From assembly GCF_016433145.1 (NCBI RefSeq), contig NC_058130.1, positions 84,962,545 to 85,026,544 on the forward strand: 64,000 nt of DNA, written 5' to 3'. Positions 26,432 to 62,050 of the stretch are shown piece by piece. Each line of letters opens with the position of its first letter. Position 1 is the first letter of the stretch. A program made the position numbers and the translations under genes. The notes beneath the pieces are model-generated. The model had not been told where the DNA came from, made no database searches, and saw nothing but the letters and a program-made list of their open reading frames with translations. Source of the stretch: Gracilinanus agilis (Eukaryota).

Positions 26432-27419
26432 TTCTGAGAAGAAGGCACAACTCTTCTTTATAGCAGATTGACTTGTTGTGGACCTTGACTTCAAAGATTC
26501 TATTGACCCCAATACTTTCAACTCCCTAAGATCACAGTTCACTAATCCAACCCTGAGGGCATGTGGGTTCAGAAAATTTGAGGAAGGACTGGGGCCATTC
26601 TGAGAAGAAGGGGCTCCACCTACCACCCTCTGTTGGGAAGGAGCCTACCCTTAGCCCCAGGCAATCTCCAGCCTCCAGCTCTAGCTGGATTCAGCTCCAC
26701 TGGCAAAGGCAAGGAAGCTTCTGGGAAAAATGGCTTCCTTGTGCTCTCTTTGACACTTTGCTAAGCAGCTACCCTCCTAGGATCAGCAATGGACAAGATC
26801 ATGATGGTATGGGCACGGGTAAAATGCCCAAGAAAAGGTCAGCCCTGGGTTCCCAGAGCATGAAAATGTGTCTAAGGGTTTAGACTCAAAAGCAATTTAA
26901 ATTCAATTAAACAAGTGAGGTAGCAAAATAAATAGAATAAGAAGCAAATTCTGCTTCTCTGGGGAAGGGAAATATTGCTGTTTCTTCCTATTCTAATATC
27001 CTTTCCCCCAAGCTTCCCTACAGCCCTGAGCTATTGTGGCTGTAGACCAATGAACAGCATCCCTTCAGATGGGAAGGGAGAGAAATCAGGATTTGGAGAT
27101 ATAACAGAGGAACTCTGAGATCTATCAGTCTAACGGTAATCTCTTCATTTTACAAATGAGAAATCTATAGCCTAAAGAGAGGTGACCTGTCTAAGGTCAC
27201 ATAAGTAAGTGGCAGAGGCAAGATTTGGCATAACTTAATGTTTGAAATCAGATCAGAAACACGATGGGGAATTTATAGATCACAACCCACCTGACCATCA
27301 TGCCTGACCATACTGATCGATAATCATTGTCCACTCTGAAGGGATATTGTCCATAAGTCTGACCCAGGAGATCTGTCCAAGACACTAGGGCCCTTTCTCA
27401 ATTTCTGACTTTCTGAGAA
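26432..27419. promoter_or_regulatory. Cluster of four STAT5-type GAS motifs upstream of WAP (candidate mammary enhancer)
   Basis: TTCTGAGAA at 26432, 26598 and 27411; TTCTGGGAA at 26719. All fit TTCYNRGAA. TGGCA (NFI half-site) at 26701 and GGAA (ETS core) at 26713 are adjacent to the 26719 site. Confidence 0.55.
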
Positions 27420-28678: not shown

Positions 28679-31600
28679 GTAGGAAACCTGAAGCTCCTGA
28701 TGTCCCCTTCTTCTCTTGTCTCCTGCTTCTTCCTCTTCTCACCTCCACTCTGAGCTTTAAACCTTCCCTTAGTCCCCAGCCCCTAAATCCTACGGTTTCA
28801 GTTTGCCATCTAAATTGTGAGGAAAAGATTGGAGGGGGGAATAGGAGGGAATTGGGAGGGCAGAGGGCTCCAGCTTGGGCCAAGATAATAGCCCCAACCA
28901 TTCTTGACTCCAAGGATCCCTAAAAATGATGAGTTGTCAGGGAAAGAGGGTTCCAATCTTGGCTTTCCACCTGCTTGTTCTGTGACTTCTAATAGGTCCC
29001 CACATCTCTCTGGATCTCATTTGGCTTATCTAGGAGATGAGGAGGCTGGATGGGAAGTCCCTTCCAGCTCAAGCTCCTCTGATTTCTAGTTTTGCTAGCT
29101 CCACATTCTCTTGTTCCTTCCAGCTGTCCATCAAGAACACCTGGCCATTTCCCTGTCCTTTTCTCTTTTCTCCCCATATTTTATCAGTTCCTACTAGTTG
29201 TAGAACCTCCCTGTCTTTTCCTGCCTCCCAGGACTGCCTGGTCCCGTGGGAAAGCTTCATTTTCAGGCATGTGATTGTACAAAGTGGCCCCAGAGCAGCC
29301 TTGCAACTTCCAGACTAGAGCAAGAAAGAATTGGGGATAGAAGGGAAGAAAGGAAAAAGAAAGGAGATAGTTGGGGGAGAACTTGGGAAAGGGAAAAAGA
29401 GGGACCTAATCCCACAAATTGCTATTAATCAAGATTTGATGGTCTAGGGTGAAGGGGAAAGTAAGAACATGAATCATGTAACCATGATAACTTTTCTAAA
29501 AAATAAAAATTATTAAAAAAAAAAGATTTGATGGTCTAATGGGGTAGAGAGAGAATAAGGAAAACAAATATATTTTAAAGGGTGCCGAGGCAAAGGAAGC
29601 TAAATACTCCAGAAAAATCTGGTATGGAAGAAAACAGAGAATGTATCAGGACATTTTTAAAAAGGAGGCAGCTAGGTGGCTCAGCAGATTGAGAACCAGT
29701 CCTAGAGAAAGGAGGACCTGGATTCAAATCTGGCCTTAGACATCTAACTGTGTGAGCTAGGACAAGTCATTTAACCTTCTATCACCTAGTGTTTACCACT
29801 CCTCTGCTTTGGAATTAATATAGATTCTAAGACAGATGGTAAGGATAAAAAAAAGAGAGAAAATAAAAGGAGATGGCACCTGAATTTGATAAAAATGATT
29901 GATTCAACAAGCAGAGTTGAGGAAAGGCTTGTGACAGGACAAAATGATTTAGAGTTGGAAGAGACCTTAGGGGCAGGGACCTCCCTTTACTAGAAAAGGA
30001 GTCAGGAATAGAAGGAGGTGGGGTGGAAGAAGGGCATAGAAGAGGGAACAGGGCAAGGGTGGGGCGTCAGGGGAGAAGCTGCAAGACTTACCATTAAGAA
30101 TGGAGAAGTTGGCAGCACTCATGACTCTTCTTCATTGCAGAGAAGTCTGGGTACTGCCCATTCTTCCAACCAACCTTGTCAGATCTAATTGACTGTAAAA
30201 GGACATGCCAGAATGATACCATTTGCCCCGGAGATATGAAGTGCTGCAGAAAGGGCTGTAGCTGGATGTGTATGAACCCCATGAAAGGTAAGAGAACTTG
30301 GTTTGGTATGGAAGTGGTCCCTATCTCTGGATCCAAGAGATCATGGGGGCTGAGACTCTGGCATTCTCCAGTTGAGATGCCTTGATAAATAGTTATGGGA
30401 ATGGGGTAGAGAGATGTACTTATGCTCCCCCCAAACCCTCTAGATTAGGGAGGACTTCCTGGAAGAGGGATAAACCGTCTGGCCTCTGAGAAGGTAGCTA
30501 CAGACCAGACTAGGGTAGAGAGGACAGCAAAGAAGAGAAGAGGAAGCCACCTGTTCTGCCCTCCACCACTGCTGCTTCTGTTCTCTTCCAGAGAAGGCTG
30601 GTATGTGCCCCGGGGCAACTTCTTCCTCTGAGGAGCGTCTGCCTTGTGGTGTTCCTTGTGAGACTGACAAGGACTGTGATGGGGAAGCCAAATGTTGTGT
30701 TCGCTCTTGTGGTCGAACCTGTTCCATGCCTATCAAAGGTAATAACGATCCCTATATGTGTTTCTAAGGCACCTGCTTTTCTAAGGCTGCTAGGTGGCAT
30801 GGTAGATAGAGTCTGCAGGACCTTTTTGAGATTAAAATTAATATACAATAGCTATTATATTTTATAAAGTTTATTAATAATAACTAAAGTAAAAAAAGCT
30901 AGCCAACTCAACCCAATTTCGAGAGGAGAGTGAGAGGGAGGAGTTTCAGAACTTATATACAAATAATGTAACAACACATTTATAGGAAAGGGAAAAGGAA
31001 TTTTGGGAGATGGAGTCTAAGGGTTCAAGATTCTAATTAATACAACCTGGAGTTTGGAAGATCCGATATTTTGAAAGAACCTGAGTTCCAATCCTGTCTC
31101 AAACACTTAATAGCTATGTGACCTTGGGCAAGTCACTTAATCTTTTTCTGTCTCTGTTACCTCATCTGTAAAATGGAAATAATAATAACACTTCCTTCCC
31201 AGAGATGTTATGAGGACCAAGTAATATTTTTAAGTGTTTTCAAAATCTTAAAGTGATATGTAAAAGTTAGACTTCCTTAAAATTACCTGGAAGATATGAA
31301 ATACAAGTACCATTTACCCCCAGTTTATTGGTAGGGCACAAGGGTCAGAGACTTGTTGCCCACAGACATAGAACTAGTGGCAGAGCTGGGATCAAGACCC
31401 ATCTGGATTTGAACCCAAGTCTTTTGATTTTAAATTCATCACTCAACTATGCTACCCGTGCCTCTTGTGATTTTAGATCAACGAAATCCTTCAAATTGCT
31501 TCACACAGACAACAGATTCCAACCTCCTCCACCAATGGGCGACTTCTCTTTAAGGCTACTGCTCCTTTCAAGGCTGGGATCCCTGTCTTCTCCCACCTGC

Positions 31601-34348
31601 TTCTAGGCAATCTCTCTCTGCCCCATTTTGCTAACAAGGTCAACGATCGATGTCCTATAACACACATTTTCCCTCCTTTCCTCCCCCTACAGTTAGGCCT
31701 GGTCGATGTCCTGTTGTCTCCGAATGGTGCCCCAGGAATGAGCGGGTCATTCAATGTAGGGGAGATTATAACTGTCAAGCAATGGAAAAGTGTTGTTTCT
31801 ATAAATGTGGTATGAGATGCATGGAATCCATCCCAGGTAAGAATCAGCCAAAGAAGCGTTGTGAGTCCTTAGACAGTGAGTCAGCTCCTTTGGAGTCTGC
31901 ATTGGGTGATACCAAGAAGCATAAAAAAAATATTGTCCTTGGGGCAGCTGGGTTGCTCAGTAGATGGAGATCCAGGCCCAGAGATGGGAGGTCCTGGGTT
32001 CATATCTGGCCCCAGACCCTTCCTAGCTGTGTGACCCTGGGCAAGTCACTTAACCCCCATTGCCTAGCCCTTACCTCTCTCCTGCCTTGGAATCAGTACT
32101 TGGTATCAATTAATTCTAAGACAGAAGGTAAGAGTTTAAAACAAAACAAAACACTGTCCTTGCCAGTTATATACAAACCTTAGAGTACTGTAGAAGTATG
32201 ACAGAGTATTAGTATTCATTACTCTTTATAAGTGCTAGAAGAAATCACAGATCCATCTGGGCCTGGTGGTATTAGAAAAGGCTTCATGGAGGAGGTGAGT
32301 TGTGATGGGCTTTGAAAGATGAGAGAGTTTCGATCACGTGTTTCAATGGGATTATGACTAGGGTTTTGGCATTAAATGATTACTTTATTACAAATAAGAA
32401 TAATATGGAAATAGGTTTTGAACAATGATACATGTAAAACCCAGTGGAACTGCTTGTCAGCTCCAGGAGGGGGGAGGGAAGAGGGGTGGGAAAATCATGA
32501 ATCATGTAACCATGGAAAAATATTCTAAATAAATAAATACATTATAAAAAGGAGGGGGAAAAAGAAAGATGAAAAAGTTTCAGGATAGGCAGAAATAAGT
32601 TTAGGCACAGCAAGAATAGAAGGATAAAAGGTATGAAAGCCAAAAAATGATAAAAAAAAATATATATATATATATATTGCCTATAGAGTCTAGAGACTTA
32701 AGTTCTAAACCTGGCTCCTTCTAATTATGAAGTTCTGGATAGAATAATGGATGGAAGAAGCACCAGCCCTAGAGGTCAGAAGGCCTGATTCAAATTCCAG
32801 CTGGGTTCCTTGATAGCTGTAGGATTTGAGGCAAGTCACAAGACCTCTCTAGGCCAGTTTCCTCAGGATTTGTACCTTTGTTCTGCTATTTATGACATCG
32901 TCATCATTCTCTCATAGCTAAGAGCCACTGAGAATCTATGTGTGGCCTGAAAGGGAGGCAATCAATCTATCAACAAGTAATTTATTAATGATCTACTGTG
33001 TAGGGTGCTGGGCTAGGCATGAAGAATAAGCCTTTTTCCCACCTATTTCTGTGTTTTTAAATTTTTTCTCTAAATTTCTTTAAATTTTTAAATTATATTT
33101 CCATCTGTGTATGGCAATGCCAGTCGTTCAGTCAACCAACATTTATTAAGCATCTACTATGTGCCAGACATGGTGCTAAGCACTGTGGGAACACAAAGAA
33201 AGCTGTAAAGGAGTTCAGTCTAAAAGGGGAAACAATATGCAAACAATTACGTACAAACAATGTGTATCCTGGTTAAACTGGGAGCAATCAACAGAGGGAA
33301 GCTATTAATATTAAGGGGATCACAAAAGGCTTCTTAGTGGGACCTAAGACCACACAGGTAATTAGATGGCAGAGCCAAAGCTAGGACTTATGATGAGTCT
33401 AGTCCAGTCCCATTCCCTCTCTGCCCCTCTGTATAATATCTGATTCAAAGTCATTTGGTGTGTGTTTGTAAGGCTAAATATATTAAGAAAACAAAGTTTC
33501 GGGGGACGAGATGGAGGTAGAGAGGAGCCTGGGAATCTTTGAAAGTCTCAAAGCCAGAATGAATGAGAGTGAGTAAGAATCATCATTTCTCCCTGTTATA
33601 CCCACCCCCATCATCAATACATGCCCAAATAATCAGCTCCCCATCCCCTCTCCCCAATTCACTTTGCAGCCTCCTAGGCTGTGATGTCTCCTGGACTGGA
33701 ACCATCAAAGATGACATCTTCCCCCTTCCCGTCTTCTAGTCCTGGCCAAGGCTGACCGTCACGATAACTCTTGGCCTTCCTTTTCTTCATCACCACCAAC
33801 AATACTACTTTTATATTTATGAAGTATGTTACATGCTTTCTCCTGATCCCTACAGTATTATTGGGAAGCAGGTAGAAAAATGACAACTATAACCATTTCT
33901 CACATGAGGAAACTAGTTCAGATAGGGTAGGTCATTTTCTCAATTAATTAGTAGCAGAATGAGGCCACAGACCCATATTATGGGCTCATAGAAGTCATAC
34001 CTGGGATTGTCAAGCTCCCAGAAGGCAAATGACTTGTCCAAGGTAATAAAGTAGCAGTAAGAAGCAGAGCAAGGATGATTCTTTCAGTTCAGTGCATTTT
34101 CTCTTCTACCATCTGCTCTCCTCCCTTTTTGACCCCAGCTGGCTAGCTAGAATGGATCCTCTTGTTTGAATCTCCCTGGTTGGTTTCAACCCACCTCAAA
34201 TCTCTTCCCTTGTCATTCAGTTCCACTGACCTGATTTATGTGGCCAGTCCCTTTCATAAGTCTAAAGAGTCCCTCTATTTCCTTTCCAGAGGAGCAAGTA
34301 GAAGCAACCAGATTTCACCAAGAGGAAAGCCCCGTGCTCGCCCTCTAA
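28606..34348 (+). CDS. WAP: Whey acidic protein, marsupial three-domain type; join(28606-28678,30141-30287,30592-30738,31693-31836,34290-34348), 189 aa
   Basis: All introns are GT-AG and phase 1; spliced length is 570 nt with an open frame. Structure is signal peptide + three 8-Cys WFDC domains + acidic tail ending VLAL. This matches my recollection of tammar wallaby WAP (start MQxVQILTL, EKAGYCP, end ...LAL). Confidence 0.92.
29664..29860 (+). mobile_element. SINE in WAP intron 1
   Basis: Family body. Confidence 0.75.
30141..30287 (+). CDS. WAP: WAP exon 2, WFDC domain (EKSGYCPFFQPTLSDLIDCKRTCQNDTICPGDMKCCRKGCSWMCMNPMK)
   Basis: Acceptor ttcattgcag, donor aag|gtaag, 147 nt, 8 Cys in WFDC spacing, N-glycosylation sequon NDT. 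Confidence 0.95.
30592..30738 (+). CDS. WAP: WAP exon 3, WFDC domain (EKAGMCPGATSSSEERLPCGVPCETDKDCDGEAKCCVRSCGRTCSMPIK)
   Basis: Acceptor ttctcttccag, donor aag|gtaat, 147 nt, 8 Cys. Not in the supplied ORF track; translated by hand. Confidence 0.95.
31693..31836 (+). CDS. WAP: WAP exon 4, WFDC domain (VRPGRCPVVSEWCPRNERVIQCRGDYNCQAMEKCCFYKCGMRCMESIP)
   Basis: Acceptor ctccccctacag, donor cag|gtaag, 144 nt, 8 Cys. Confidence 0.95.
31941..32150 (+). mobile_element. SINE in WAP intron 4
   Basis: A/B boxes and family body. Confidence 0.85.
32345..32560 (+). mobile_element. L1 3' tail in WAP intron 4
   Basis: aatgatacatgtaaaacccagtggaa...catggaaaaatattctaaataaataa. Confidence 0.75.
34290..34348 (+). 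CDS. WAP: WAP exon 5 coding part (EEQVEATRFHQEESPVLAL*)
   Basis: Acceptor tttcctttccag, phase-1 compatible, TAA at 34346-34348, AATAAA about 90 nt downstream. Confidence 0.88.
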
Positions 34349-35231: not shown

Positions 35232-35306
35232 AGGTAGGTCCTGTTAGGGGACCTAACACAGGTGCCTGCACTGGTTGGGGATGCCAGAAGACCTCAGGAA
35301 AGCATC

Positions 35307-35738
35307 ATGCCTGAGAAGCGGAGTCACCATGGATCCTTGAATACTCATAGCCAAATCCGTTCACGCTCCTCAAGAGCCCAGCTGCAGTTCCCCGTGAGCC
35401 GTGTAGACCGCTTTCTTCGCCAGGGTCACTATGCCCAAAGATTGGCCTCAAGTGCCCCTGTTTTCCTGGCTGCTGTACTGGAATACCTGACTGCTGAGAT
35501 CCTGGAGTTGGCAGGCAATGCTGCCCGCGACAATAAGAAGACCCGCATCGCTCCCTGCCACGTGCAGCTGGCTGTGCGTAACGATGTCGAGCTCAACCAG
35601 CTCTTTGGCCATGTCACCATCTCACAGGGTGGAGTTCTGCCCCGCATTCACCCAGAGCTGGTGCAGCCAGCAACCGGGGGCCGAAGTAGCCAGAGTCACG
35701 TTGGACGTAACCATAACTATTCAGTGAAGGCCAAGTAA
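35307..35738 (+). CDS. H2A.R: Divergent histone H2A variant, H2A.R type, copy 1 (143 aa, intronless)
   Basis: Clear H2A histone fold ([14 protein letters not shown]...[25 protein letters not shown]...[10 protein letters not shown]) with non-canonical tails. True ATG at 35307; the ORF-track start is a GTG. H2A identity is certain; the H2A.R assignment is by recalled resemblance to marsupial H2A.R. Confidence 0.85.
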
Positions 35739-48755: not shown

Positions 48756-49187
48756 TCATTTGGTCTTTACTGTCTGGATAAAAGAATTTCCTCCAAGGTT
48801 TCGGCTACTTTGGCCTTTGTTCACAGACTGCAGGAGCTCCGAATGGATGCGGGGCAAGACTCCACCCTGTGAGATGGTGACGTCTCCAAAGAGTTGGTTG
48901 AGCTCAGCATCATTGCGTACAGCCAGCTGCACGTGGCGGGGAGCGATGCGGCTCTTCTGGTTGTCACGAGCAGCATTGCCTGCAAGCTCCAGGATTTCAG
49001 CAGTCAGGTACTCCAGCACAGCAGCCAGGAAAACAGGGGCACCAGATGCCAACCGCTGGGCATAGTGGCCCTGGCGCAGAAAGCGGTCCACGCGGCTCAC
49101 AGGGAACTGTAGTTGGGCCCTTGAGGAGCGTGAGCGGGTTCGGGCACGGGGATGCGAGGGTCCTGGGTGGCTCCGTTTCTCAGACAT
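48756..49187 (-). CDS. H2A.R: Divergent histone H2A variant, H2A.R type, copy 2 (143 aa, intronless)
   Basis: Same fold as copy 1, ATG in good Kozak context (gcaccATG) at 49187, same length as copy 1, convergent orientation. Confidence 0.85.
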
Positions 49188-49262
49188 GGTGCTAGCCTGA
49201 GCTCCGCTAACATCCCCCAACTGGTCCAAGCGCCTGTGAAATTCCGCATGCTAGGGGAATCC

Positions 49263-53000: not shown

Positions 53001-54589
53001 AGCCCCCACAATCCTCAAATAGAGACCTTAGAGAGATCATCTAGTGCAAATCTCTCATTTCAAAGATGAGGAGACTGAGACCCAGAGAGGTTCAAATGAT
53101 TTGTGTTGAAGGCCTTAAAGTATCAGAGCAGGATTTAAAAAAAATCCTCAGGCAATATTATATCTAGAGTTTTTTCTTCACCACAATGGGCTACTCAATC
53201 AAAGGCAAATTAATGCTGAGCATCCTTTCTTGTTATTTGTCAGGATTCAGTTGTATTCAACTCTTTGTGGATCCATGTATCATATTATCTGTCCATGGGT
53301 TTGTTTGTTTGTTTTTAGCAAAGACAGTGGAGTAGTTTGCTTTTTCCTTCTCCAGTTCATTTTACAGATGAGGAAACTGAGGCAAACAGGGTTAAGTGTC
53401 TTACCCAGGGTCACACTTCTAGGAAATATCTGAGGCCAGATTTGAACTCACATCTTTCTGATGCCAGGTCCAGCACTCTATGCACTGAACCACCTAGCTG
53501 CCTCATTCCATTTCTCATTAAAAATTAATGAACTGGCACTGTAATTTATCACCTAGTCTTTTGAGTTTTATTAGCATATCAATTAGAACCTGATATAATT
53601 AATTACACTGGAATCATTGAAGCTGAGGGTCAGTCCCACCAAGATGCCCATTTTATAGAAGAATCCCAGCCTGAAAGCCAGCCTAGAGAAGTCTTTTAAC
53701 AATAGGTAAGTTGATCATGACATCACAATCATTGATTATGATGAGACTCAAACATGTGTATACATATATTAACTATGACTGAGCAAATCACTTAAGATCC
53801 ACCTGTTTCACACAATGCTGTAGAATTCATCTAATAAACCAATTCAATAAACATTTATTAAGCACCTACTATATGCCAGGCAGTGTGCTCAGTGTTGTCA
53901 CACTGAAGAAATTCACAGATCCGGATATATTAATAATGTTTTAAAAATATTTTTGAGAAATGGAGTTTGTTTAAAGGGTTTTTATTGGTTTGTTTAGAGA
54001 TTCATTAAGTTGTTTTTTAGCAAAGTTTCTTAAATTCCTAATTTTTATAAAATCAGCTGCATATATAGGACTATTAGGACAAAATAATGTTCCTATATTG
54101 GATGTTTATGCTTAGTTTTTCTTTGTTATACTGAAGGATCCAACTGGGAAACGGTTGGTACACAAAGACAAAAGGCACCACCAATATAATACGTATTTTA
54201 GTAATGGTTTGGTTTCAGGGTGACATCTTTAAAAAAAAACTTCTAGACATTTTTATAAAACTTAAATGTGTAAATTTAGACCTCGATTGAGAAGGGAGGG
54301 GGAGGGTTGAAAGAACATTTGGTTTGAACAGCAGTTTGGTGGGGAGGGAACATGGTGACTTTATTCACCTTAAATCTGTTGATGTGATATGATTTTGAAG
54401 GAGTTCAAAGAAATCATACTTCATCTCTAAAAAACATGCTTTCTTCACTTTTTTTACTGAGATCTAAAATTCCTTCAGAAGGGATCAAAGTCTTTTAATT
54501 GCATGAGACTTACTATAGAAATAATCCCCTAGGGAGTATGAAATAGTTTACCTTTCAGATCTATGAATAAGGAGGGAAATTATGACCAA

Positions 54590-55800
54590 AAAGGAGATAG
54601 CATTAGGAGATGTAAAATGGATGGTTCTGATAATGTTAAATTTAAATGGTTTGTGCAAACAAAACCAATGAAGCCAAGTCTTGAAGGAAAGTAGAAAAAT
54701 AGAGGGAAAATCTTATAGCATATTTCTCTGATAAAGGCCTCATTTCTCAAACATATAGAGAATTGAATAAAATTTGTGAGAATATGAGTCATGCTCCAAT
54801 TGCTAAATAGTAAATAAAGAATATGAATGGGCAAATTGCAGAAGAAATCAAAGCTACTATAGTCATATAAAAAGACTCTAAATCTGGCCTCGGATACTTC
54901 CTAGCTGTGTGACCCTGGGCAAGTTACTTAACCCCCATTGCCTAGCCCTGTAACAAATAAAATTAATATAGAAGGATATATATAAAAAGAGATTAGGGTT
55001 TTAAAAAAATTTTTTTAAAAGACTCTAAATCACTATTGACAGAGAAAGGCAAATCAAAACCTTAGCAGACTGGCTAATATAACAGAAAAGGAAAATGACA
55101 TATATTGGAGGAGATGGGGAAAAATTAGGATGGTCACCAATAGACTATTGGCAGGGTTGTGAACTTATCCAACCATTCTGGAGAGGATTTGGAACTATGC
55201 CCAAAGGGCTATAAAATTGTGTATGCCCTTTGACCTAGCAGCACTACTTTGGAGGAGGAAGAGGAAGAAGAGGAGGAGGAGGAGGAGAAGGAAAAAAAGG
55301 ACTAACACATACAAAAATACTTACAGAACCTCTTTTTGTGGCAGCAAAGAATTGGAATTTGAAGGGATACCTATCATTGGGGTTAATAAGGAAACATATT
55401 TTAAACAATTGTACATGTATGCATATCAAACTACTTGCCTTTTGAAGGATGGGAAAGGGAAGGAAGGGAAGAAGAGAATTTGGGATTCAGAAGTTTTAAA
55501 AACAAATGTTAAGGGGGCAGCTGGGTAGCTCAGTGGATTGAGAGCCAGGCCTAGAGACGGGAGGTCCTGGGTTCAAATCTGGCCTCAGACACTTCCCAGC
55601 TGGGTGGCTCTGGGCAAGTCGATTGACCCCCATTGCCTAGCTCTTACCACTTCTGTCTTGGAGCCAATACACAGTACACAGTATTGGCTCCAAGATGGAA
55701 GGTAAAGGTTTAAAAAATGTTAAAAATTGTTTTTACATATAATTAGAAGAAAAAAGATTAAAATCAAAACAAAAACCCTCTGAGAGAAATAACTAAAAAG
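54590..55800 (+). mobile_element. L1 3' fragment containing a (GAG)n tract and SINEs (54882-55015, 55514-55716)
   Basis: L1 ORF2-end sequence; the SINE at 55514 is flanked by aaatgttaa. Confidence 0.65.
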
Positions 55801-55959
55801 TCACATTAAAATGTAAATGACTGATATCAAAATTTTTGTTAAGAGCACATTTTGCTCTAGTTCTGATGCCCTGTTGCCTGTTTAGTGAAAGGATAGGGGT
55901 GTGAGACTATTAAGTCATTAGTCAAACAGTTACCAGTTATTCAGTGTCCAATATTCATG

Positions 55960-56117
55960 TCATATTTCCTGGTCCCAGTTCCTGGGGCACTCCAGGTCTC
56001 CCCGTTTACATAAAACACTGAAGGAAATCATCCATACCGCCAGGCCTGCAAGGAAGAGCCCCACCACTGAATAAATCACCAATGAGTCGTCATCCTCTTG
56101 TAAAGTTTCTTTTGGGG
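55960..56117 (-). CDS. IgV gene exon 3, stalk + TM + tail (APKETLQEDDDSLVIYSVVGLFLAGLAVWMISFSVLCKRGDLECPRNWDQEI*)
   Basis: Acceptor tcttctccccacag, ~24-aa hydrophobic segment followed by a KR stop-transfer, TGA at 55962-55960. Confidence 0.8.
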
Positions 56118-57339
56118 CTGTGGGGAGAAGATATCCAGTCACCATTACAGTTCACTCGAGCACCATAGCCCCTGATTCAGAAGCATAGTGAAAGAGTATA
56201 GACCTGCTCTATCAGAAGACCTGAGTTCTAGTTCTGACTCTGCCACAAACTAGCAAGTTAGTATGCAATAAGCTTGTAGCTTTACGACCTTGACCTCTCT
56301 TGGATTTCACTTCCTCACCTATCAATGCAGATAACACCTGACCTATTTACCTAGGATTTAAAAAATCCTGCGTGTGATATTTTATTACCAATGAGAACGA
56401 GCAAATTTCTTAACCTACCATATTCAGCTTTCTCTTCTGTAAATTGAGAAAGTTAGACTATAAGATGGTCCCTGAGGTCCATTCCAGATCTCTAATGTAC
56501 ATGTACACCCTTTTCCATGCTGAAGGTTCTTGAGAAGGATACTGTGATTTGAGCACTGTTTGAAGAAGACTTCTCATGATAGAGAAGGAAGGAAGTCATG
56601 GTTTACCTGCCACCTGGAGAATCACATATCCCACTAGTGAATGTCGGCTATCCTCCATGACACATTTGTATGTCCCGCTGTCTTGCAGCCTCACATCCTT
56701 CAAAGTCAGCACCACTTCCCCTGGCCTGATGGAGAGGGAGGTACGGTTCTGGAACTCTGTAGCCTGGTCCTCTATCTGCTCAGCTTCAAAATGATAACTA
56801 TGCACCATGGTGTTTGGTCCATGCTGGCTGAGGCGATACCAAGTAACACTGAGATTTGATAACTGGAAGTCTGCCCTAAAATAAAGGGTGACATTTTCCC
56901 CCATCTTTGAAGTCACTTTTGTGTCTCCCATGAGTAAAGAAGAAATACCTGGGGATGAAGGAGATAACTAAGGTTAGGGCTAGTGTGCCAGAGTCCTGGC
57001 TTCCCAGGCCCTGGAAGCACAATAGGTCTCCTCCCTCTAAGCAAACTAGACAGGTTCTGGGCAGGAAGAACAGGCTACTGGGGAGAACCTTCCAGAGAAT
57101 TATGCCTTTCTTACTCCCTAAGTTCAGATGCTCCTTCAGGCCACTCTGCAAATAGAAAAGCTTCTCCTCTGGTCTCTTTTAACTCTGCTTCTCTCATAAG
57201 ATTTCATCACCAACTCACCTGTAGACATTTTTGCCAGAATGAGAGCTTCAGCAATCCCAAATAGCTTCAGAAATCCCAAAAGCAAGAGCAAGGACCACCC
57301 ACAGGAATATTGCCTTCCTGGTGTAGAGGAGAAAGCCAT
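55960..57339 (-). CDS. Single-IgV type I membrane protein, B7/butyrophilin-like; complement(join(55960-56117,56607-56948,57219-57339)), 206 aa
   Basis: Three exons with strong GT-AG phase-1 junctions; spliced length is 621 nt, open. Signal peptide, then a V-set domain (VTWYR, VHSYH...EDQ...F.NRTSL, L.L.DV...DSGTYKC), then a TM helix and a 15-aa tail. The ATG at 57339 is inferred; a 5' UTR exon may exist further upstream. Confidence 0.78.
56607..56948 (-). CDS. IgV gene exon 2, V-set Ig domain (342 nt)
   Basis: Acceptor ctccttcatccccag, donor cag|gtaaa, V-set motifs, sequons NVT, NLS and NRT. Confidence 0.88.
57219..57339 (-). CDS. IgV gene exon 1, signal peptide (MAFSSTPGRQYSCGWSLLLLLGFLKLFGIAEALILAKMST)
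   Basis: Leu-rich core and donor cag|gtgag at 57218; phase 1 matches the Ig exon. Confidence 0.7.
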
Positions 57340-58599
57340 CAATAAAGAATCAGGAAAATCCACTAAATTTATTCTATTACTCTACAAATGATCAGGAAAT
57401 CCCAGGAGTCAGTCATACTCAATTTATATCAACTTAATTTGCCCTTTTTCATGTAATTACAGTATTTTAGACAACCCCTAGTCTAATCCATCCTTGAAGA
57501 AGGAGTCACTTCCAAAATATCCCCAAGAAAGATCACCAAAGATTCCACCTAAACATCTCCATTAAAAGGGAACTTCCTACCTTTAATTTGATAATTTTAT
57601 TAACTGTCTCCTATATGTCAGGCATTTCTAATCATCCTACTGTATTCTTGGACAACTCTAATTCTTAGGTTTCAAAAGGGTAGAACTAGAAACCTCTTTA
57701 GGGCTCATCTAATCTAGTGATTCTTCATTTTAAGCTATCCTCTTGCTTTGGGTCTTTGGCATAAATGGAGGCTTAGACATTGACCCATTATTAACAGATA
57801 GCATGCCCCTGCTAATAAAAGTTTTCTTGCTCAGATAATTGCCTCGATTTATCCTTTTGTTAAATTTCAATGACGGAAGCTTGTTTCCAGTTTTTTGATC
57901 CTACAAATAACATAGCTATGAATATGAACATGGTGGGGAGAAGGGCACAGTGGTAGGCAAGATGTCTTTAGAGTATATTTCTAATAATTATGTAGCAAGG
58001 ACATGAATCTTTACCATGGTAAAGAATCCACCCCCACTTTCTGCCCCTACCAACTTGTATATACATCATAGGGACCTAGAGCTGAAAACATCTGCTCTTC
58101 CTTGTCTTTATTTCCAGGCTTTCTCAGGTAAGAGCTCCATGGTAATTTCCATTGCCTGTCCCTTTTGTCACAGAGGAAGGTGGGAAATGGAAAGGCAAAG
58201 AGAAAGGGAATATGAGAACCATCCCAAATCTTTCTCCCCCATGCTGAGATGAGGTGACCTGTGAAAGGCATGCTACTCTAGTGAAGAAAAAGAGACGAAT
58301 GATTCATAGAGAGGGAAATACTTTTATTTAGAAAGGGTAAATAAATATGCTTCCATGACAACTGAAGAGGGTTTTCATTTGAAGTATTATAAGACAGAAA
58401 GTTACCAAGTTGGGACATTTTGGACCTACGATTCAAAAACACTGAAGTTGCATTTATAAAAAGAGAGTTAAAGAGCAGTGAGCAACCAGGAGACAGGACT
58501 GTTGTGGTAAATAATTGGGGATGGAATCTCATTAATGAACTCCTGAAATTTTTTCCCACTGGAATTAGGGAATCAGGATTTCACTGAGAGAGACCCTTT

Positions 58600-58785
58600 T
58601 ACTTCTTTCTTGTTCTTTAAATTCTTACTTACTGTGTCAATTCTAAGATAGAAGAGCAGCGAGGGCTAGGTGATCAGGGTTAAGTGACTTGTCCAAGGTT
58701 ACACATGTCTGAGATCAGATTTGAACCCAGGTCTTCTTGAGTCCAGGTCTAAAGTTCTTCTATCCATTATGCTACCTACCTGCCC
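58600..58785 (-). mobile_element. SINE
   Basis: Family body on the minus strand. Confidence 0.7.
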
Positions 58786-59203
58786 GATAATTCTCTCTTG
58801 ACTAAGGTTCTAGGAAAAGGAAGGGTATTTTTTGTATTCTTTGTTCAGTAAATGAAATTTGTTCTTTGCTTTGTGAGACTGAATGTTTGCAAGGGGAGTT
58901 GATTTCCATATTTGGAAGCAGTAACAGATTGATTTTCCCAAGTGCCAGCTGAATCGGTTAAGGGATCAAGAACAGAGAAATGAAAGGTCACCAAAATGAC
59001 CATAATATAAATCAGGAGAGTGCCATGACACAAAGGTTGCAGTGGAATTACTTGTCTTAAAGTTTAACTTAAGAAATTACTTCCTAATTTAAACCTATGT
59101 AAATATGATAAAGTGTCACTAGGGTTAACCTTATCTGATAATATAATAGTGAGGATGTTTTCAGAGGGTTGATGAAGACTATCCTAAAACTCATCCTCTA
59201 GGT

Positions 59204-59369
59204 CAGGGGTCTGCAACGTATGGCTCTTTCTGCAAGAGCCATAAAATCATTTTTTTTTCAGGCGCTGTTACAGGAGCCGCACTGTGAGCACTGTACGGCT
59301 CTCATGAAATTACATTTTAAAAAATGTGGCATTTATGGCTCTCACGGCCAAAAAGGTTGCCGACCCCTG
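59204..59369. mobile_element. hAT (Charlie-type) MITE, 166 bp
   Basis: 16-bp TIRs CAGGGGTCTGCAACGT / CAGGGGTCGGCAACCT (2 mismatches); 8-bp TSD ctctaggt / ttctaggg fitting nTCTAGnn. Confidence 0.85.
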
Positions 59370-59729
59370 TTCTAGGGTTTCAGGAAAAAGAGATGATCTG
59401 AAGGAAAAACTAGGAAGAATTAAAGTGGCACACATTCATATTATAATCAATGCAGAGCCAACTCTGCTCTATATTCATTGTGGATGAAGGCACTAGACTG
59501 GATATACCTCTAATATTCATTTCATGCATTTCAAATTCCTTAACCATCAAACATTTTGAATGATTGTTCTCTAGGGAGAAAATTCAAAACGTAGAAATGT
59601 AGAAAGAGATTTGACTAGGATTCAGGACACCTGCATACCAGGTGTGTAATTAGAATCTGTTATCCTAAAAACTACAATTCCCAGCATCCCACTCTCCTCA
59701 TGTTACATGCTGACGTAGGGAGGATAGTT

Positions 59730-59730
59730 T

Positions 59731-59777
<47 letters not shown>

Positions 59778-59948
59778 CTTTTATCTTAGTATCATTTCTA
59801 AGACAGAAGAGCAACAATGGCTAGGAAAATAGGGTTAAATTACTTGTCCAAGATCACAGAGCTAGGAATTCTCTGAGGTCACATTTGAATCCAGGTCTTC
59901 TTGACTCCAGACCTGGAACTCTAACTACTGTGTTACCTAGCTGCCCCA
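59730..59948 (-). mobile_element. SINE whose tail has expanded into a (TTTC)n microsatellite
   Basis: (TTTC)n at ~59730-59778 is contiguous with the SINE 3' end. Confidence 0.75.
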
Positions 59949-60377
59949 CTAAAGCCCTTTCTAGAACTAACATAACATCCTATGCTTCTGTGGTTTTATT
60001 GCAGGTAAGTTTAAGGGAAAAGTGTGAGGAGGAAGAACAAGAAAGCACCAGCTTGAGTTTGTTTGAGCAAGGGAGCATGGAAGAGTGGTATAAGAGTGCA
60101 AATTAATGAAGTTGGGAAATGCTTATCAAGAACCTCTCAAACAGCTGGTTCCTCCCTTTTCTCTAGCACCACTGACAAATCTATCTAGTAAGAGAGTATG
60201 TGGGACCACACCACAAGAGGAGGAGCTCTGGATCTCAACTGTTGGGCAACTAACAATCTAATAAGAGAGAGGCAGAGATGGCAAGGCATGATAGCAAAAA
60301 TTGGAACTAGACGACCTCGTCTTCAATCCTGACTGAAATTTATTAGGTGTGTGAACTCAGTAAAGATACTTAACCTC

Positions 60378-60561
60378 TTTTTTTTAAAACCCTTAACTTC
60401 TGTGTATTGGCTCCTAGGCGGAAGAGTGGTAAGGGTGGGCAATGGGGGTCAAGTGACTTGCCCAGGGTCACACAGCTGGGAAGTGTCCAAGGCCGGATTT
60501 GAACCTAGGACCTCCTGTCTCTAGGCCTGACTCTCACTCCACTGAGCTACCCAGCTGCCCC
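60378..60561 (-). mobile_element. Young SINE1_Mdo-like SINE with TSD
   Basis: Flanked by ttaacctctttt on both sides. Confidence 0.9.
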
Positions 60562-61324
60562 TTGTTAACCTCTTTTAATTTCAGTTATTGTCATCCGTCA
60601 AACAGAGGCAAGTCTGCACCACCTACCTTACCAGGTTGTTGTGAGAAAACCATTTTGTGAACTGCAAAGTGCTATAAAAATGGGTGCTTTCTAAGTGAGA
60701 ATGGGAAGATTTTCATCAGCCTGTTGTCCTTGATTCCAGGAACATGGAGTCTAGGCTCAGCCCTTGGTATCTTTTGATACCAAGACAGTCACTTTCTTTA
60801 ACCTTTATTAATTACCCTATCCCTTTACCTTGGCCTGTTCCTTCCACTACAGTGCTAATCCAACTGTTTTTTTCCTCCCTCCCTTTTATAGTTCATTCAA
60901 GCCTCACTCATCTTAAATAGCCCCAATATGAGAGAAACAAACTCACTTTTCTGGGACCATCTGGCTGCCATATTTCCTTCCAGTGTGATCACCTAGCAGC
61001 TGAACCAGTCACCCAGTGCCTCTTGATTTCTCCGTTGCTTTTAACCATATACTTTTCTGAACTACACCTCTAAGGCAAGTCCAACCCAATGTCCCAACCC
61101 ACCCAACATATCCAAAATTTCTGATGTTGGAAAGTAACTGCTTATTCATCAGTGGTGGAACTTGATAAGACTGCAGAACCAATGCCTGTTCTTGGGGCTG
61201 GTTCATTAAGTAGCATCTCTCTAGAAGGACAGATGAGCTTTCTTTCTCCCCAGCCACATTTCATAGTTGAAGGGTTATGAGTTTACCAGATTAAAAAGGA
61301 ATTAGAAGGAATATAGAGGAATGT

Positions 61325-62050
61325 GTAAAAATAAATTAAGGGCTTTAAAAGACTATCTGCCTTTTGATCCAGCCATAGCACTGCTTGGTTTATACCCCAA
61401 AGAGATAATAAGGAAAAAGACTTGCACAAAAATATTTATAGCCACACTCTTTGTGGTTGCAAGAAATTTGAAAATGAGAGAATGTCCTTCGATTGGGGAA
61501 TGGCTGAACAAATTGTGGTATCTATTGGTGATGGAATACTATTGTGCTCAAAGGAATAATGAACTGGAGGAATTCCATATGAACTGGAATGACCTCCAGG
61601 AATTGATGCAGAGTAAAAGGAGCAGAACCAGGAGAACCTTATACACAGAGGCTGATGATACACTGTGGTACAATCAAACATAATGGACTTCTCTACTAGC
61701 GGCAATCCAGAGCAAGGCTGAGGGACTTATGAGAAAGAAAACTAGCCACATTCAGAGGAAGAACTGTGGGAGGAGAAACACAGAGGAAAAACAACTGCTT
61801 GAACACATGGGCTGATGGGGATTTTATTGGGGATGAAGACACTAAATGATAACTCTAGCCCAATTATCAATAATATGGAATTAGGGCTTAATCAATGATA
61901 CACGTAAAACCTAGTGAAATTATGCATCAGCTAAGGGGGGTTAGGTGGGTTTGGAGAGAGGGAAAGAACATGAAACGTAAATATGGGGAAATATTCAAAA
62001 TAAAAATTAAAAAAAAGAAAATAAATTAGAAAGTAAAAACAAAAAAAAAT
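61325..62050 (+). mobile_element. L1 ORF2 C-terminus and 3' UTR
   Basis: LPFDPAIALLGLYPKE...FIATLFVVARN...CPSIGEWLNKLWY...MEYYCA. Confidence 0.9.

What the first reader, a model, noticed from the sequence alone, without database searches (positions are those of the whole stretch)
55960..57339. Unnamed compact single-IgV B7/butyrophilin-like membrane protein gene 22 kb downstream of the WAP milk gene
Seen: three exons fit in under 1.4 kb and splice into an intact 206-aa type I membrane protein with a signal peptide, one V-set domain, an acidic stalk (QEDDD), a TM helix and a 15-aa tail lacking Tyr motifs. Known: the segment VHSYH-x(5)-EDQ-x-EFQNRTSL resembles the IgV domains of B7-family members (HHLA2, CD276, VTCN1) and butyrophilins. 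These normally carry an IgC or further Ig domains, but the 489-bp intron here has no room for one. I recognise no eutherian gene with this architecture at the WAP locus. Inference: a possibly marsupial-specific immune co-signalling ligand. A mammary or milk role is conceivable because butyrophilin is a milk-fat-globule protein and one perfect STAT5-type site (TTCTAGGAA, 58808-58816) lies ~1.5 kb upstream, but one site is weak evidence.
Basis: partly seen in the sequence, partly recalled or inferred. Interest (0 to 1): 0.78.

Follow-up and report, generated by a model that had tools for sequence, protein, structure and literature searches.

The report
Fast-evolving marsupial single-IgV membrane gene
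This is a real, spliced gene found in five marsupial orders that encodes a small cell-surface protein with one butyrophilin/B7-like immunoglobulin domain. That domain has changed faster than neutral DNA, which points to an unknown recognition role in immunity or reproduction.

Summary
The three exons, GT-AG introns and 206-aa frame are present as described, and the middle exon is a significant V-set domain. The 5' end is wrong. They come from an upstream exon whose ATG is at 60971. The gene therefore has four exons and encodes 207 aa.

The same four-exon gene is intact in Monodelphis, koala, bilby, Dromiciops and Antechinus. NCBI names it inconsistently (BTN1A1-like, ERMAP-like, uncharacterized), and I found no paper on it. 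H2A.R lies downstream in the three species where neighbours could be read.

The IgV is of the MOG/butyrophilin/B7 type. There is no IgC or B30.2 exon. The nearest non-marsupial relatives are turtle IgV-IgC proteins.

The IgV exon has omega about 1.7 (p 0.0015 against 1) and diverges at least as fast as its neighbouring intron. No neutral simulation keeps the frame open, so diversifying selection fits better than decay. Opossums have replaced the canonical first Ig cysteine with Phe.

The STAT5 site is intronic and occurs at chance frequency, so nothing supports a milk role. Tissue, partner and presence outside marsupials remain untested. The scan had not noted this gene before.

The parts
60972..61330 (-). 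Conserved upstream block (putative promoter plus 5' UTR). It holds a CCAAT motif at 61183-61179 and a GATA motif at 61169-61164. The transcription start is at or beyond about 61063.
   Evidence: Pairwise identity is 69-80% to koala, Dromiciops and Antechinus over 400 nt, and alignability is lost further upstream. The X2 contig carries 117 nt beyond the exon 2 acceptor, which means at least 92 nt of 5' UTR. Promoter function is inferred.
60947..60971 (-). Coding part of exon 1: ATG plus 8 codons and 1 nt (MAARWSQK), followed by a GTGAGT donor at 60946.
   Evidence: The loose end of the spliced X2 contig matches 60950-60971 at 22 of 22 positions. The same 25-nt coding exon is present in koala, Dromiciops and Antechinus genomic DNA.
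57318..60946 (-). Intron 1 (3629 nt).
57219..57317 (-). Exon 2 (99 nt, phase 1-1): the hydrophobic core and the predicted cleavage region of the signal peptide.
   Evidence: The RNA contigs of X1 and X2 start matching at 57317-57319 and join 57217/56946 (cut +2). The exon is 99 nt in koala and Dromiciops and 81 nt in Antechinus.
56607..56948 (-). Exon 3 (342 nt, phase 1-1): the single IgV domain, with three N-x-S/T sites. Phe65 (56880-56878) replaces the canonical B-strand Cys, and Cys137 is retained.
   Evidence: Pfam V-set E 5.7e-11. AF2 model pLDDT 88. Foldseek hits are MOG and BTN3A1 at TM 0.80-0.83.
56118..56606 (-). Intron 3 (489 nt). It has no Ig-like exon and carries a short dispersed repeat at about 56209-56254.
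   Evidence: The join 56117/56607 (CT..AC on the plus strand) appears in X2 at depth about 206, and X1 joins one base away at 56116/56606. An intron-retaining contig has depth 7.9. tblastn with the turtle IgC finds nothing.
55960..56117 (-). Coding part of exon 4: acidic stalk, TM helix (about 56085-56011), 16-aa tail and TGA stop. The 3' UTR extends at least to 55896.
   Evidence: The tail varies between species.

Best explanation
Shown: a transcribed, correctly spliced four-exon gene (minus strand, ATG 60971 to stop 55960) encodes a 207-aa type I membrane glycoprotein. The protein has a signal peptide, one IgV of the MOG/butyrophilin/B7 type, a 12-residue acidic stalk, one TM helix and a tail of about 16 residues with no known signalling motif. 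It is the orthologue, in a non-Monodelphis opossum, of an unnamed gene kept next to H2A.R in at least five marsupial orders. Shown: the IgV evolves faster than neutral, while the frame, exon structure and Ig core residues are preserved. Inferred: it is a non-signalling cell-surface recognition molecule, a ligand or co-receptor in the manner of B7/BTN/MOG proteins. Its IgV face (most variable in the C'-C''-D segment) would engage a partner that drives diversifying selection, in immunity or in reproduction. The conserved TM segment may hold it in a complex in cis. Inferred: it descends from an amniote IgV-IgC B7/BTN-like gene and has lost the IgC exon.
For: Spliced contigs in two other species. 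Exon 1 located. Orthologues with identical exon structure rebuilt from genomic DNA. H2A.R lies 6-9.5 kb downstream on the same strand in Monodelphis, Antechinus and the window. V-set E 5.7e-11. Best solved relatives are VTCN1, BTN2A1, CD276 and MOG. AF2 pLDDT 88 and Foldseek MOG/BTN3A1 TM 0.80-0.83. IgV omega is 1.73, with 2dlnL 10.1 and p 0.0015 against omega = 1, and 1.2-1.8 across five codon models. The IgV exon is 70-80% identical against 77-86% for intron 2. None of 5000 neutral simulations keeps the frame open in four species, with a mean of 11 stops. All indels in the body are in frame. The turtle IgV-IgC family is the best non-marsupial match, at 64 bits against 43 for the next.
Against: No tissue, protein or binding data are available. 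The run ids are coded, so the tissue with high depth is unknown. Variable sites are equal across the three codon positions (80/70/74) and NG86 omega is 0.64-1.45. That pattern alone would also fit weak constraint. The canonical disulfide is lost in opossums. The last 10 or so residues are truncated, frameshifted or extended in different species. Only species with an annotated intact model could be sampled, so losses in other marsupials are not excluded. The codon tests rest on four or five sequences.
Confidence: 0.6

Rival explanations
1. One reading: a three-exon gene starting at ATG 57339 and giving 206 aa, driven by a promoter just upstream.
For: The frame is open from 57339. An in-frame ATG sits at the equivalent place in koala, so a transcript starting inside intron 1 could use it.
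Against: Both RNA contigs of relatives stop matching at the cag acceptor at 57317-57319, and X2 continues into the exon at 60971-60947. MAARWSQ(K/R) begins the Monodelphis (internal Met), Dromiciops and Antechinus proteins, with close variants in bilby and koala. Genomic DNA shows the same 25-nt coding exon in three other orders. The ATG lies within the polypyrimidine tract.
Confidence: 0.08
2. The gene is decaying: a transcribed relic under relaxed constraint, at least in opossums.
For: omega is near 1 by counting methods. Codon positions are equally variable. Phe replaces the structural Cys in the window and in Monodelphis. The C-terminal tail is unstable. Among the listed changes against the Monodelphis-like run, 14 are non-synonymous and 7 synonymous.
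Against: The body of the frame is intact in seven sequences from five orders. No neutral simulation out of 5000 achieves this even for four of them. All indels are multiples of three. omega is significantly above 1 in the IgV rather than equal to 1. Ig core residues (W, D-x-G-x-Y-x-C, the G-strand) are invariant. Spliced RNA has depth about 187 against 7.9 for the unspliced form. The near-identical DNA run X5 also keeps the frame.
Confidence: 0.1
3. It is a mammary or milk-fat-globule protein, co-regulated with WAP through STAT5 in the way BTN1A1 is.
For: It lies about 24 kb from WAP. NCBI labels the Monodelphis orthologue BTN1A1-like.
Against: The single GAS site is intronic, and GAS sites occur at chance frequency. 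The gene is convergent with WAP and separated from it by two H2A.R genes, which are testis-restricted according to PMC5880237. It lacks the B30.2 domain that, from my general knowledge of BTN1A1, that protein uses in milk-fat secretion. The koala milk study lists only the true BTN1A1.
Confidence: 0.06
4. It is a gamete or reproductive-tract recognition protein rather than an immune one.
For: Domain-wide omega above 1 is typical of reproductive surface proteins (general knowledge). Its conserved neighbour H2A.R is testis-specific. There are weak sub-threshold Izumo-Ig hits.
Against: The Izumo-Ig scores are below Pfam's cut-off and lie under the V-set hit. Neighbourhood is not co-expression. The best sequence and fold relatives are immune or myelin B7/BTN/MOG IgVs.
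Confidence: 0.17

Closest known systems
Unnamed marsupial orthologues: Monodelphis XP_056660862.1 ('butyrophilin subfamily 1 member A1-like'), bilby LOC141496094, koala LOC144456765, Dromiciops LOC122735583, Antechinus XP_051840642.1 ('ERMAP-like')
   Same: They share the four-exon structure (25 / 99 or 81 / 339-342 / last exon), the signal-IgV-stalk-TM-short tail layout and H2A.R downstream. IgV identity is 48-83%. They form one group in the IgV tree (support 81/88), with the window sister to Monodelphis (93/83).
   Different: Australidelphian proteins keep the canonical first Cys, and the two opossum proteins have Phe. Tail ends differ: a stop in koala, the +1 frame in Monodelphis and bilby, and an extension in Dromiciops.
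Turtle IgV-IgC-TM B7/BTN-like proteins (Pelusios A0A8C8VLK8; Chrysemys and Trachemys 'CD276 antigen-like' or 'BTN1A1-like')
   Same: They are the best non-marsupial match to the marsupial-only profile (64 bits against 43 for the next). IgV identity is 35-43%. The end of the V exon and the start of the next exon read alike (QVA|AP-Y/K-E).
   Different: The turtle proteins have a C2-set IgC domain (PF22705) and a longer tail. The tree does not resolve a marsupial-turtle clade (support 38/19). Synteny could not be shown.
Myelin-oligodendrocyte glycoprotein (MOG)
   Same: It has an IgV-only ectodomain of the butyrophilin type. It is the top Foldseek match (1py9, TM 0.80, 27-31% identity) and a sequence hit at E about 1e-6.
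   Different: From general knowledge, MOG has a second hydrophobic segment and a longer C-terminus, keeps the Ig disulfide, is MHC-linked and is highly conserved. This gene has one TM and evolves very fast.
B7-H4 (VTCN1), BTN2A1, BTN3A1, CD276, PD-L1
   Same: The IgV has the family's C'-C''-D sequence pattern. Profile scores are VTCN1 42.5 bits and BTN2A1 39 bits, and BTN3A1 gives TM 0.83.
   Different: All of these carry at least one IgC domain, and butyrophilins also carry a B30.2 domain. Neither is encoded here.

Membership tests
B7/butyrophilin superfamily | N-terminal IgV domain of the B7/BTN sequence and fold type | tested here: met
   Pfam V-set E 5.7e-11. Best solved relatives are VTCN1, BTN2A1, CD276 and MOG. 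The AF2 model matches MOG and BTN3A1 at TM 0.80-0.83.
B7/butyrophilin superfamily | Membrane-proximal IgC (C2-set) domain after the IgV | tested here: not met
   RNA joins the IgV exon directly to the stalk/TM exon. tblastn with the turtle IgC finds nothing in 64 kb. The orthologous proteins have no second Ig domain.
B7/butyrophilin superfamily | Type I membrane topology with domain-per-exon, phase 1 structure | tested here: met
   There are two hydrophobic segments, at residues 16-37 and 167-191. Exons 2 and 3 are phase 1-1. No dedicated signal-peptide predictor was available.
Butyrophilins proper (BTN, BTNL, ERMAP) | Cytoplasmic B30.2 (PRY-SPRY) domain | tested here: not met
   The tail is 16 aa. 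Pfam finds no SPRY in the orthologues. There is no long ORF between the stop and H2A.R.
MOG | IgV followed by two hydrophobic segments; orthology with the MHC-linked gene | tested here: not met
   Only one hydrophobic segment follows the IgV. The locus is WAP/H2A.R, not the MHC. The definition of MOG itself is from general knowledge.
Canonical V-set Ig fold | B-strand Cys to F-strand Cys disulfide packed on the C-strand Trp | tested here: not met
   The window and Monodelphis have Phe at the B-strand position, while Trp and the F-strand Cys are kept. Koala, bilby, Dromiciops, Antechinus and the Logan contig keep both Cys.
Marsupial orthologue group of this gene | Same exon structure, same neighbour (H2A.R), one group in the tree | tested here: met

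The most novel reading that the evidence does not exclude
This would be a B7/butyrophilin-type ligand retained only in marsupials and lost from eutherians, stripped down to a bare IgV and evolving under sustained positive selection. It would be locked in co-evolution with a lineage-specific receptor. One candidate is a gamma-delta or the marsupial gamma-mu T-cell receptor, by analogy with BTN, BTNL and Skint proteins. Another is a pathogen that uses it as an entry receptor.
Probability: 0.07. Interest if true: 0.85.

Novelty: new member of a known kind. Interest (0 to 1): 0.55.

Why it matters
Marsupials give birth to immunologically naive young and have immune receptors that eutherians lack, yet few lineage-restricted surface ligands have been described. 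This gene is kept for roughly 80 million years (general knowledge of marsupial divergence times). Its recognition domain shows domain-wide omega above 1, a signature usually seen in host-pathogen or gamete recognition. It is small, easy to express, and present in Monodelphis, the laboratory opossum. The opossum lineage also offers a natural test of an IgV that works without its canonical disulfide. The practical gain is a corrected gene model and one consistent identity for loci that NCBI currently labels BTN1A1-like, ERMAP-like or uncharacterized.

Tried and rejected
1. I searched for an IgC or B30.2 exon in the window and found none.
2. GAS/STAT5 sites are not enriched: 28 found against 29.7 expected.
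3. The 37-nt 5' loose end of the X1 contig is not in the window, so it is an unexplained alternative 5' end or a chimera.
4. Turtle synteny could not be assessed. There are no informative neighbours within 10 kb and no H2A.
5. The IgV tree with the sequences at hand does not support a marsupial-turtle sister relation (38/19). Named mammalian B7/BTN sequences could not be brought in as references, so no full family phylogeny was made.
6. The strand-versus-loop variability test was not significant (p 0.25), although the C'-C''-D segment is the most variable.
7. Literature searches for the LOC and XP identifiers, for marsupial B7/butyrophilin genes and for the WAP locus found nothing on this gene.
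9. The full 207-aa product has no single reference, so it was not sent to any search or fold tool. Exons and orthologues were used instead.
10. There is no AATAAA or ATTAAA within 1.46 kb after the stop.

Full report
**1. What is in the sequence**

- The 342-nt exon alone scores E 5.7e-11 against Pfam V-set. The other two pieces match no family.
- Hydropathy gives two hydrophobic stretches: one N-terminal, and one at residues 167-191 of the revised protein.
- The protein has three N-x-S/T sites, all in the IgV exon. There is only one cysteine in the mature ectodomain.
- The window has no N runs.

**2. The gene model needs a fourth exon**

- I laid the contigs of four public runs on 55800-57500 (1701 letters).
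- X1 (organism A) and X2 (organism B) are 92-94% identical to the window, and both skip both introns.
  - X2 joins 56117/56607, with CT..AC on the plus strand.
  - X1 joins one base away, at 56116/56606.
  - Both join 56946/57217, with the cut 2 places to the right.
- In X2 the spliced contig has depth about 187, and an intron-3-retaining contig has depth 7.9. That is the pattern of RNA.
- Both contigs stop matching at 57317-57319.
- The X2 contig goes on for 117 further letters. The reported consensus shows 30 of them, and a 22-letter stretch taken from that consensus occurs once in the window, at 60950-60971, with no mismatch.
- That site reads ATG plus 8 codons plus one base, followed by GTGAGT. 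Joining 60971-60947 to 57317 keeps the frame and gives 207 aa starting MAARWSQK.
- I rebuilt the same structure from genomic DNA of three other species so that the translation equals the NCBI protein:

| Species | Locus | Coding exon 1 | Exon 2 | Exon 3 | Exon 4 |
|---|---|---|---|---|---|
| Koala | L001 | 25 nt | 99 nt | 339 nt | terminal |
| Dromiciops | L004 | 25 nt | 99 nt | 342 nt | terminal |
| Antechinus | L005 | 25 nt | 81 nt | 339 nt | terminal |

Koala has an in-frame ATG at the same place, so an intron-initiated isoform is not excluded, but nothing shows it.

**3. Orthologues and neighbourhood**

- The word-index searches and the exhaustive profile search together found these proteins:
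  - Monodelphis XP_056660862.1 ('butyrophilin subfamily 1 member A1-like', 214 aa; 83% identical in the IgV)
  - bilby LOC141496094 (three isoforms)
  - koala LOC144456765
  - Dromiciops LOC122735583
  - Antechinus 'erythroid membrane-associated protein-like'
  - one Logan RNA contig from an unidentified marsupial (L002)
- Above 64 bits, no eutherian, monotreme, bird or squamate protein appeared with a single matched stretch.
- The window is not Monodelphis domestica. The listed X2 differences convert the window's IgV into the Monodelphis sequence, so organism B is Monodelphis or a very close relative. X5 is DNA about 99% identical to the window.
- A 143-aa H2A gene lies 6 kb downstream on the same strand in Monodelphis and 9.5 kb downstream in Antechinus.
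- In the window the equivalent H2A is at 49232-48918 (minus strand), with a second copy at 35262-35576 (plus strand).
- WAP, with three PF00095 exons, lies at 30125-32180 on the plus strand.
- These are the H2A.R genes. They are described as testis-restricted and on opossum chromosome 6 in PMC5880237.

**4. Family**

- With the single sequence, the best solved relatives are BTN2A1, VTCN1, MOG and CD276, at E about 1e-7 to 1e-6.
- With a profile of seven marsupial IgVs, the best single-domain scores are VTCN1 at 42.5 bits and BTN2A1 at 39 bits.
- An AlphaFold2 model of the window's IgV (25-row alignment) has pLDDT 88 and pTM 0.82. Its top Foldseek matches are MOG (TM 0.80), BTN3A1 (TM 0.83), BTN2A1 and PD-L1.
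- There is no IgC exon. RNA joins the IgV to the stalk/TM exon, and tblastn with a turtle IgC finds nothing in the window.
- There is no B30.2-sized ORF before H2A.R.
- I re-scored the hits of the marsupial-only search per domain. One non-marsupial protein stands out: a Pelusios IgV-IgC-TM protein at 64 bits, against 43 for the next.
- It belongs to a turtle family that is auto-named CD276-like, BTN1A1-like or BTNL8-like. Members are 35-43% identical to the window's IgV.
- In Chrysemys the V exon ends ..VA and the IgC exon starts AP-Y-E. The marsupial V exon ends ..VA or ..VT, and the last exon starts AP-K-E. This fits loss of the IgC exon but does not prove it.
- A tree of the available IgVs groups the marsupial sequences (support 81/88) but leaves their link to turtles unresolved.

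**5. Evolution**

*Rates*
- Pairwise NG86 omega is 0.64-1.45 overall and 0.74-1.46 in the IgV.
- Variable sites are equally common at codon positions 1, 2 and 3 (80, 70 and 74).
- The IgV exon is less conserved than the adjacent intron 2 in all six species pairs: 70-80% against 77-86%.
- Within opossums the IgV exon differs at 27 of 336 positions. Intron 3 differs by about 6%.
- Maximum-likelihood codon models give omega 1.73 for the IgV exon (five sequences). The fit is better than omega = 1 (2dlnL 10.1, p 0.0015), and omega is 1.2-1.8 across five model variants.
- The rest of the coding sequence gives omega 1.13, not different from 1.

*Evidence that the frame is maintained*
- The frame is open in every sequence, and all indels in the body are multiples of three.
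- None of 5000 neutral simulations along the estimated tree leaves four species without a stop. The mean is 11 stops.
- Ig core positions are invariant: the C-strand Trp, D-S-G-x-Y-x-C and the G-strand. The C'-C''-D segment is the most variable.

*Reading and caveats*
- I read this as diversifying selection on a maintained protein.
- Only four or five sequences were used.
- Only species with an intact annotated model could be sampled.

*Lineage-specific features*
- The B-strand Cys is Phe in the window and in Monodelphis but Cys in all five australidelphian sequences.
- The tail after CKRG(D/E)L is unstable. Koala has a stop. Dromiciops reads on. Bilby and Monodelphis use the +1 frame.
- The window's own DNA, read in that +1 frame, gives the bilby ending exactly.

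**6. Regulation**

- TTCTAGGAA at 58808-58816 exists but lies in intron 1.
- TTCNNNGAA occurs 28 times in the window against 29.7 expected.
- The 400 nt upstream of the true ATG are 69-80% identical across four orders and carry CCAAT and GATA motifs. Conservation is lost further upstream, where an L1-like ORF begins.
- These identities are close to those of intron 2, so they are weak evidence of constraint.

**7. How it most likely works**

- The protein has no cytoplasmic signalling module. Its signal peptide and TM segment look better conserved in the alignments than its ectodomain. Its IgV is of the B7/BTN/MOG type and is under positive selection.
- The most economical reading is a surface ligand or accessory subunit whose IgV contacts a rapidly co-evolving partner. 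This part is inference.
- I rate immune recognition somewhat above gamete recognition, and a mammary role low.

**8. Limits**

- No vertebrate genome collection could be searched at the DNA level, so absence from eutherians and monotremes rests on predicted proteins only.
- Run identities and tissues are coded.
- The 207-aa product has no single reference and was never typed into a tool.

Noticed in passing
window 26432-27419: Four TTCNNNGAA sites lie within 1 kb, a few kb upstream of the first WAP 4-DSC exon (30125). This is a plausible STAT5 cluster of the WAP promoter or enhancer, and it contrasts with the single intronic site near the IgV gene.
   Followed up: no
window 30125-32180 (+): WAP has three four-disulfide-core exons (Pfam PF00095, E 7e-11, 7e-9 and 1e-9). 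From general knowledge, three domains is the marsupial form of the gene.
   Followed up: partly
window 35262-35576 (+) and 48918-49232 (-): Two H2A.R-type histone genes lie between WAP and the IgV gene and are 79% identical to each other over the fold. One of them keeps its place downstream of the IgV gene in Monodelphis and Antechinus.
   Followed up: partly
window 55955-55981 (-): The last 27 nt of the coding region read PRNWDQEI* in frame 0 and ELGPGNMT* in frame +1. Frame +1 is exactly the C-terminus of the bilby protein and nearly that of Monodelphis. The nucleotides are conserved across orders while the frame in use differs.
   Followed up: partly
window 57337-57339 and L001 about 18724: An in-frame ATG sits 22 nt upstream of the exon 2 acceptor in both the window and koala. 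It may be chance, or the start of an intron-initiated isoform.
   Followed up: partly
window 56209-56254: There is a short dispersed repeat in intron 3. Many X5 contigs end or begin here, and depth rises about tenfold.
   Followed up: no
window 56574: Relative to X5 (the near-identical DNA run) and X2 (Monodelphis-like), the window lacks 9 nt in intron 3 (an insertion of C/TAGTTTCTA in the others).
   Followed up: no
window 61321-61683 (+): A 120-aa ORF resembles the C-terminal part of LINE-1 ORF2 (my recollection; Pfam gave no hit). It marks where promoter conservation ends.
   Followed up: partly
window 61140-61150; L001 and L005 upstream blocks: Koala and Antechinus carry a TGCTGACTCAT (AP-1/NF-E2-like) motif about 15 nt from the invariant GATA motif. 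It is mutated in the window and deleted in Dromiciops.
   Followed up: no
L002:83-856 and L005:182-929: The first 860 nt of the Logan RNA contig match a stretch about 9 kb upstream of Antechinus exon 1 and are joined directly to exon 2. This may be an alternative first exon, a read-through from a neighbour, or a repeat.
   Followed up: no
window 54500-55959 (-): No AATAAA or ATTAAA lies within 1.46 kb downstream of the stop codon. The X1 contig ends 64 nt after the stop.
   Followed up: no
X1 contig, 5' end (beyond window 57319): The last 37 letters of the X1 contig match nothing in the window, unlike the X2 contig, which continues into exon 1.
   Followed up: partly
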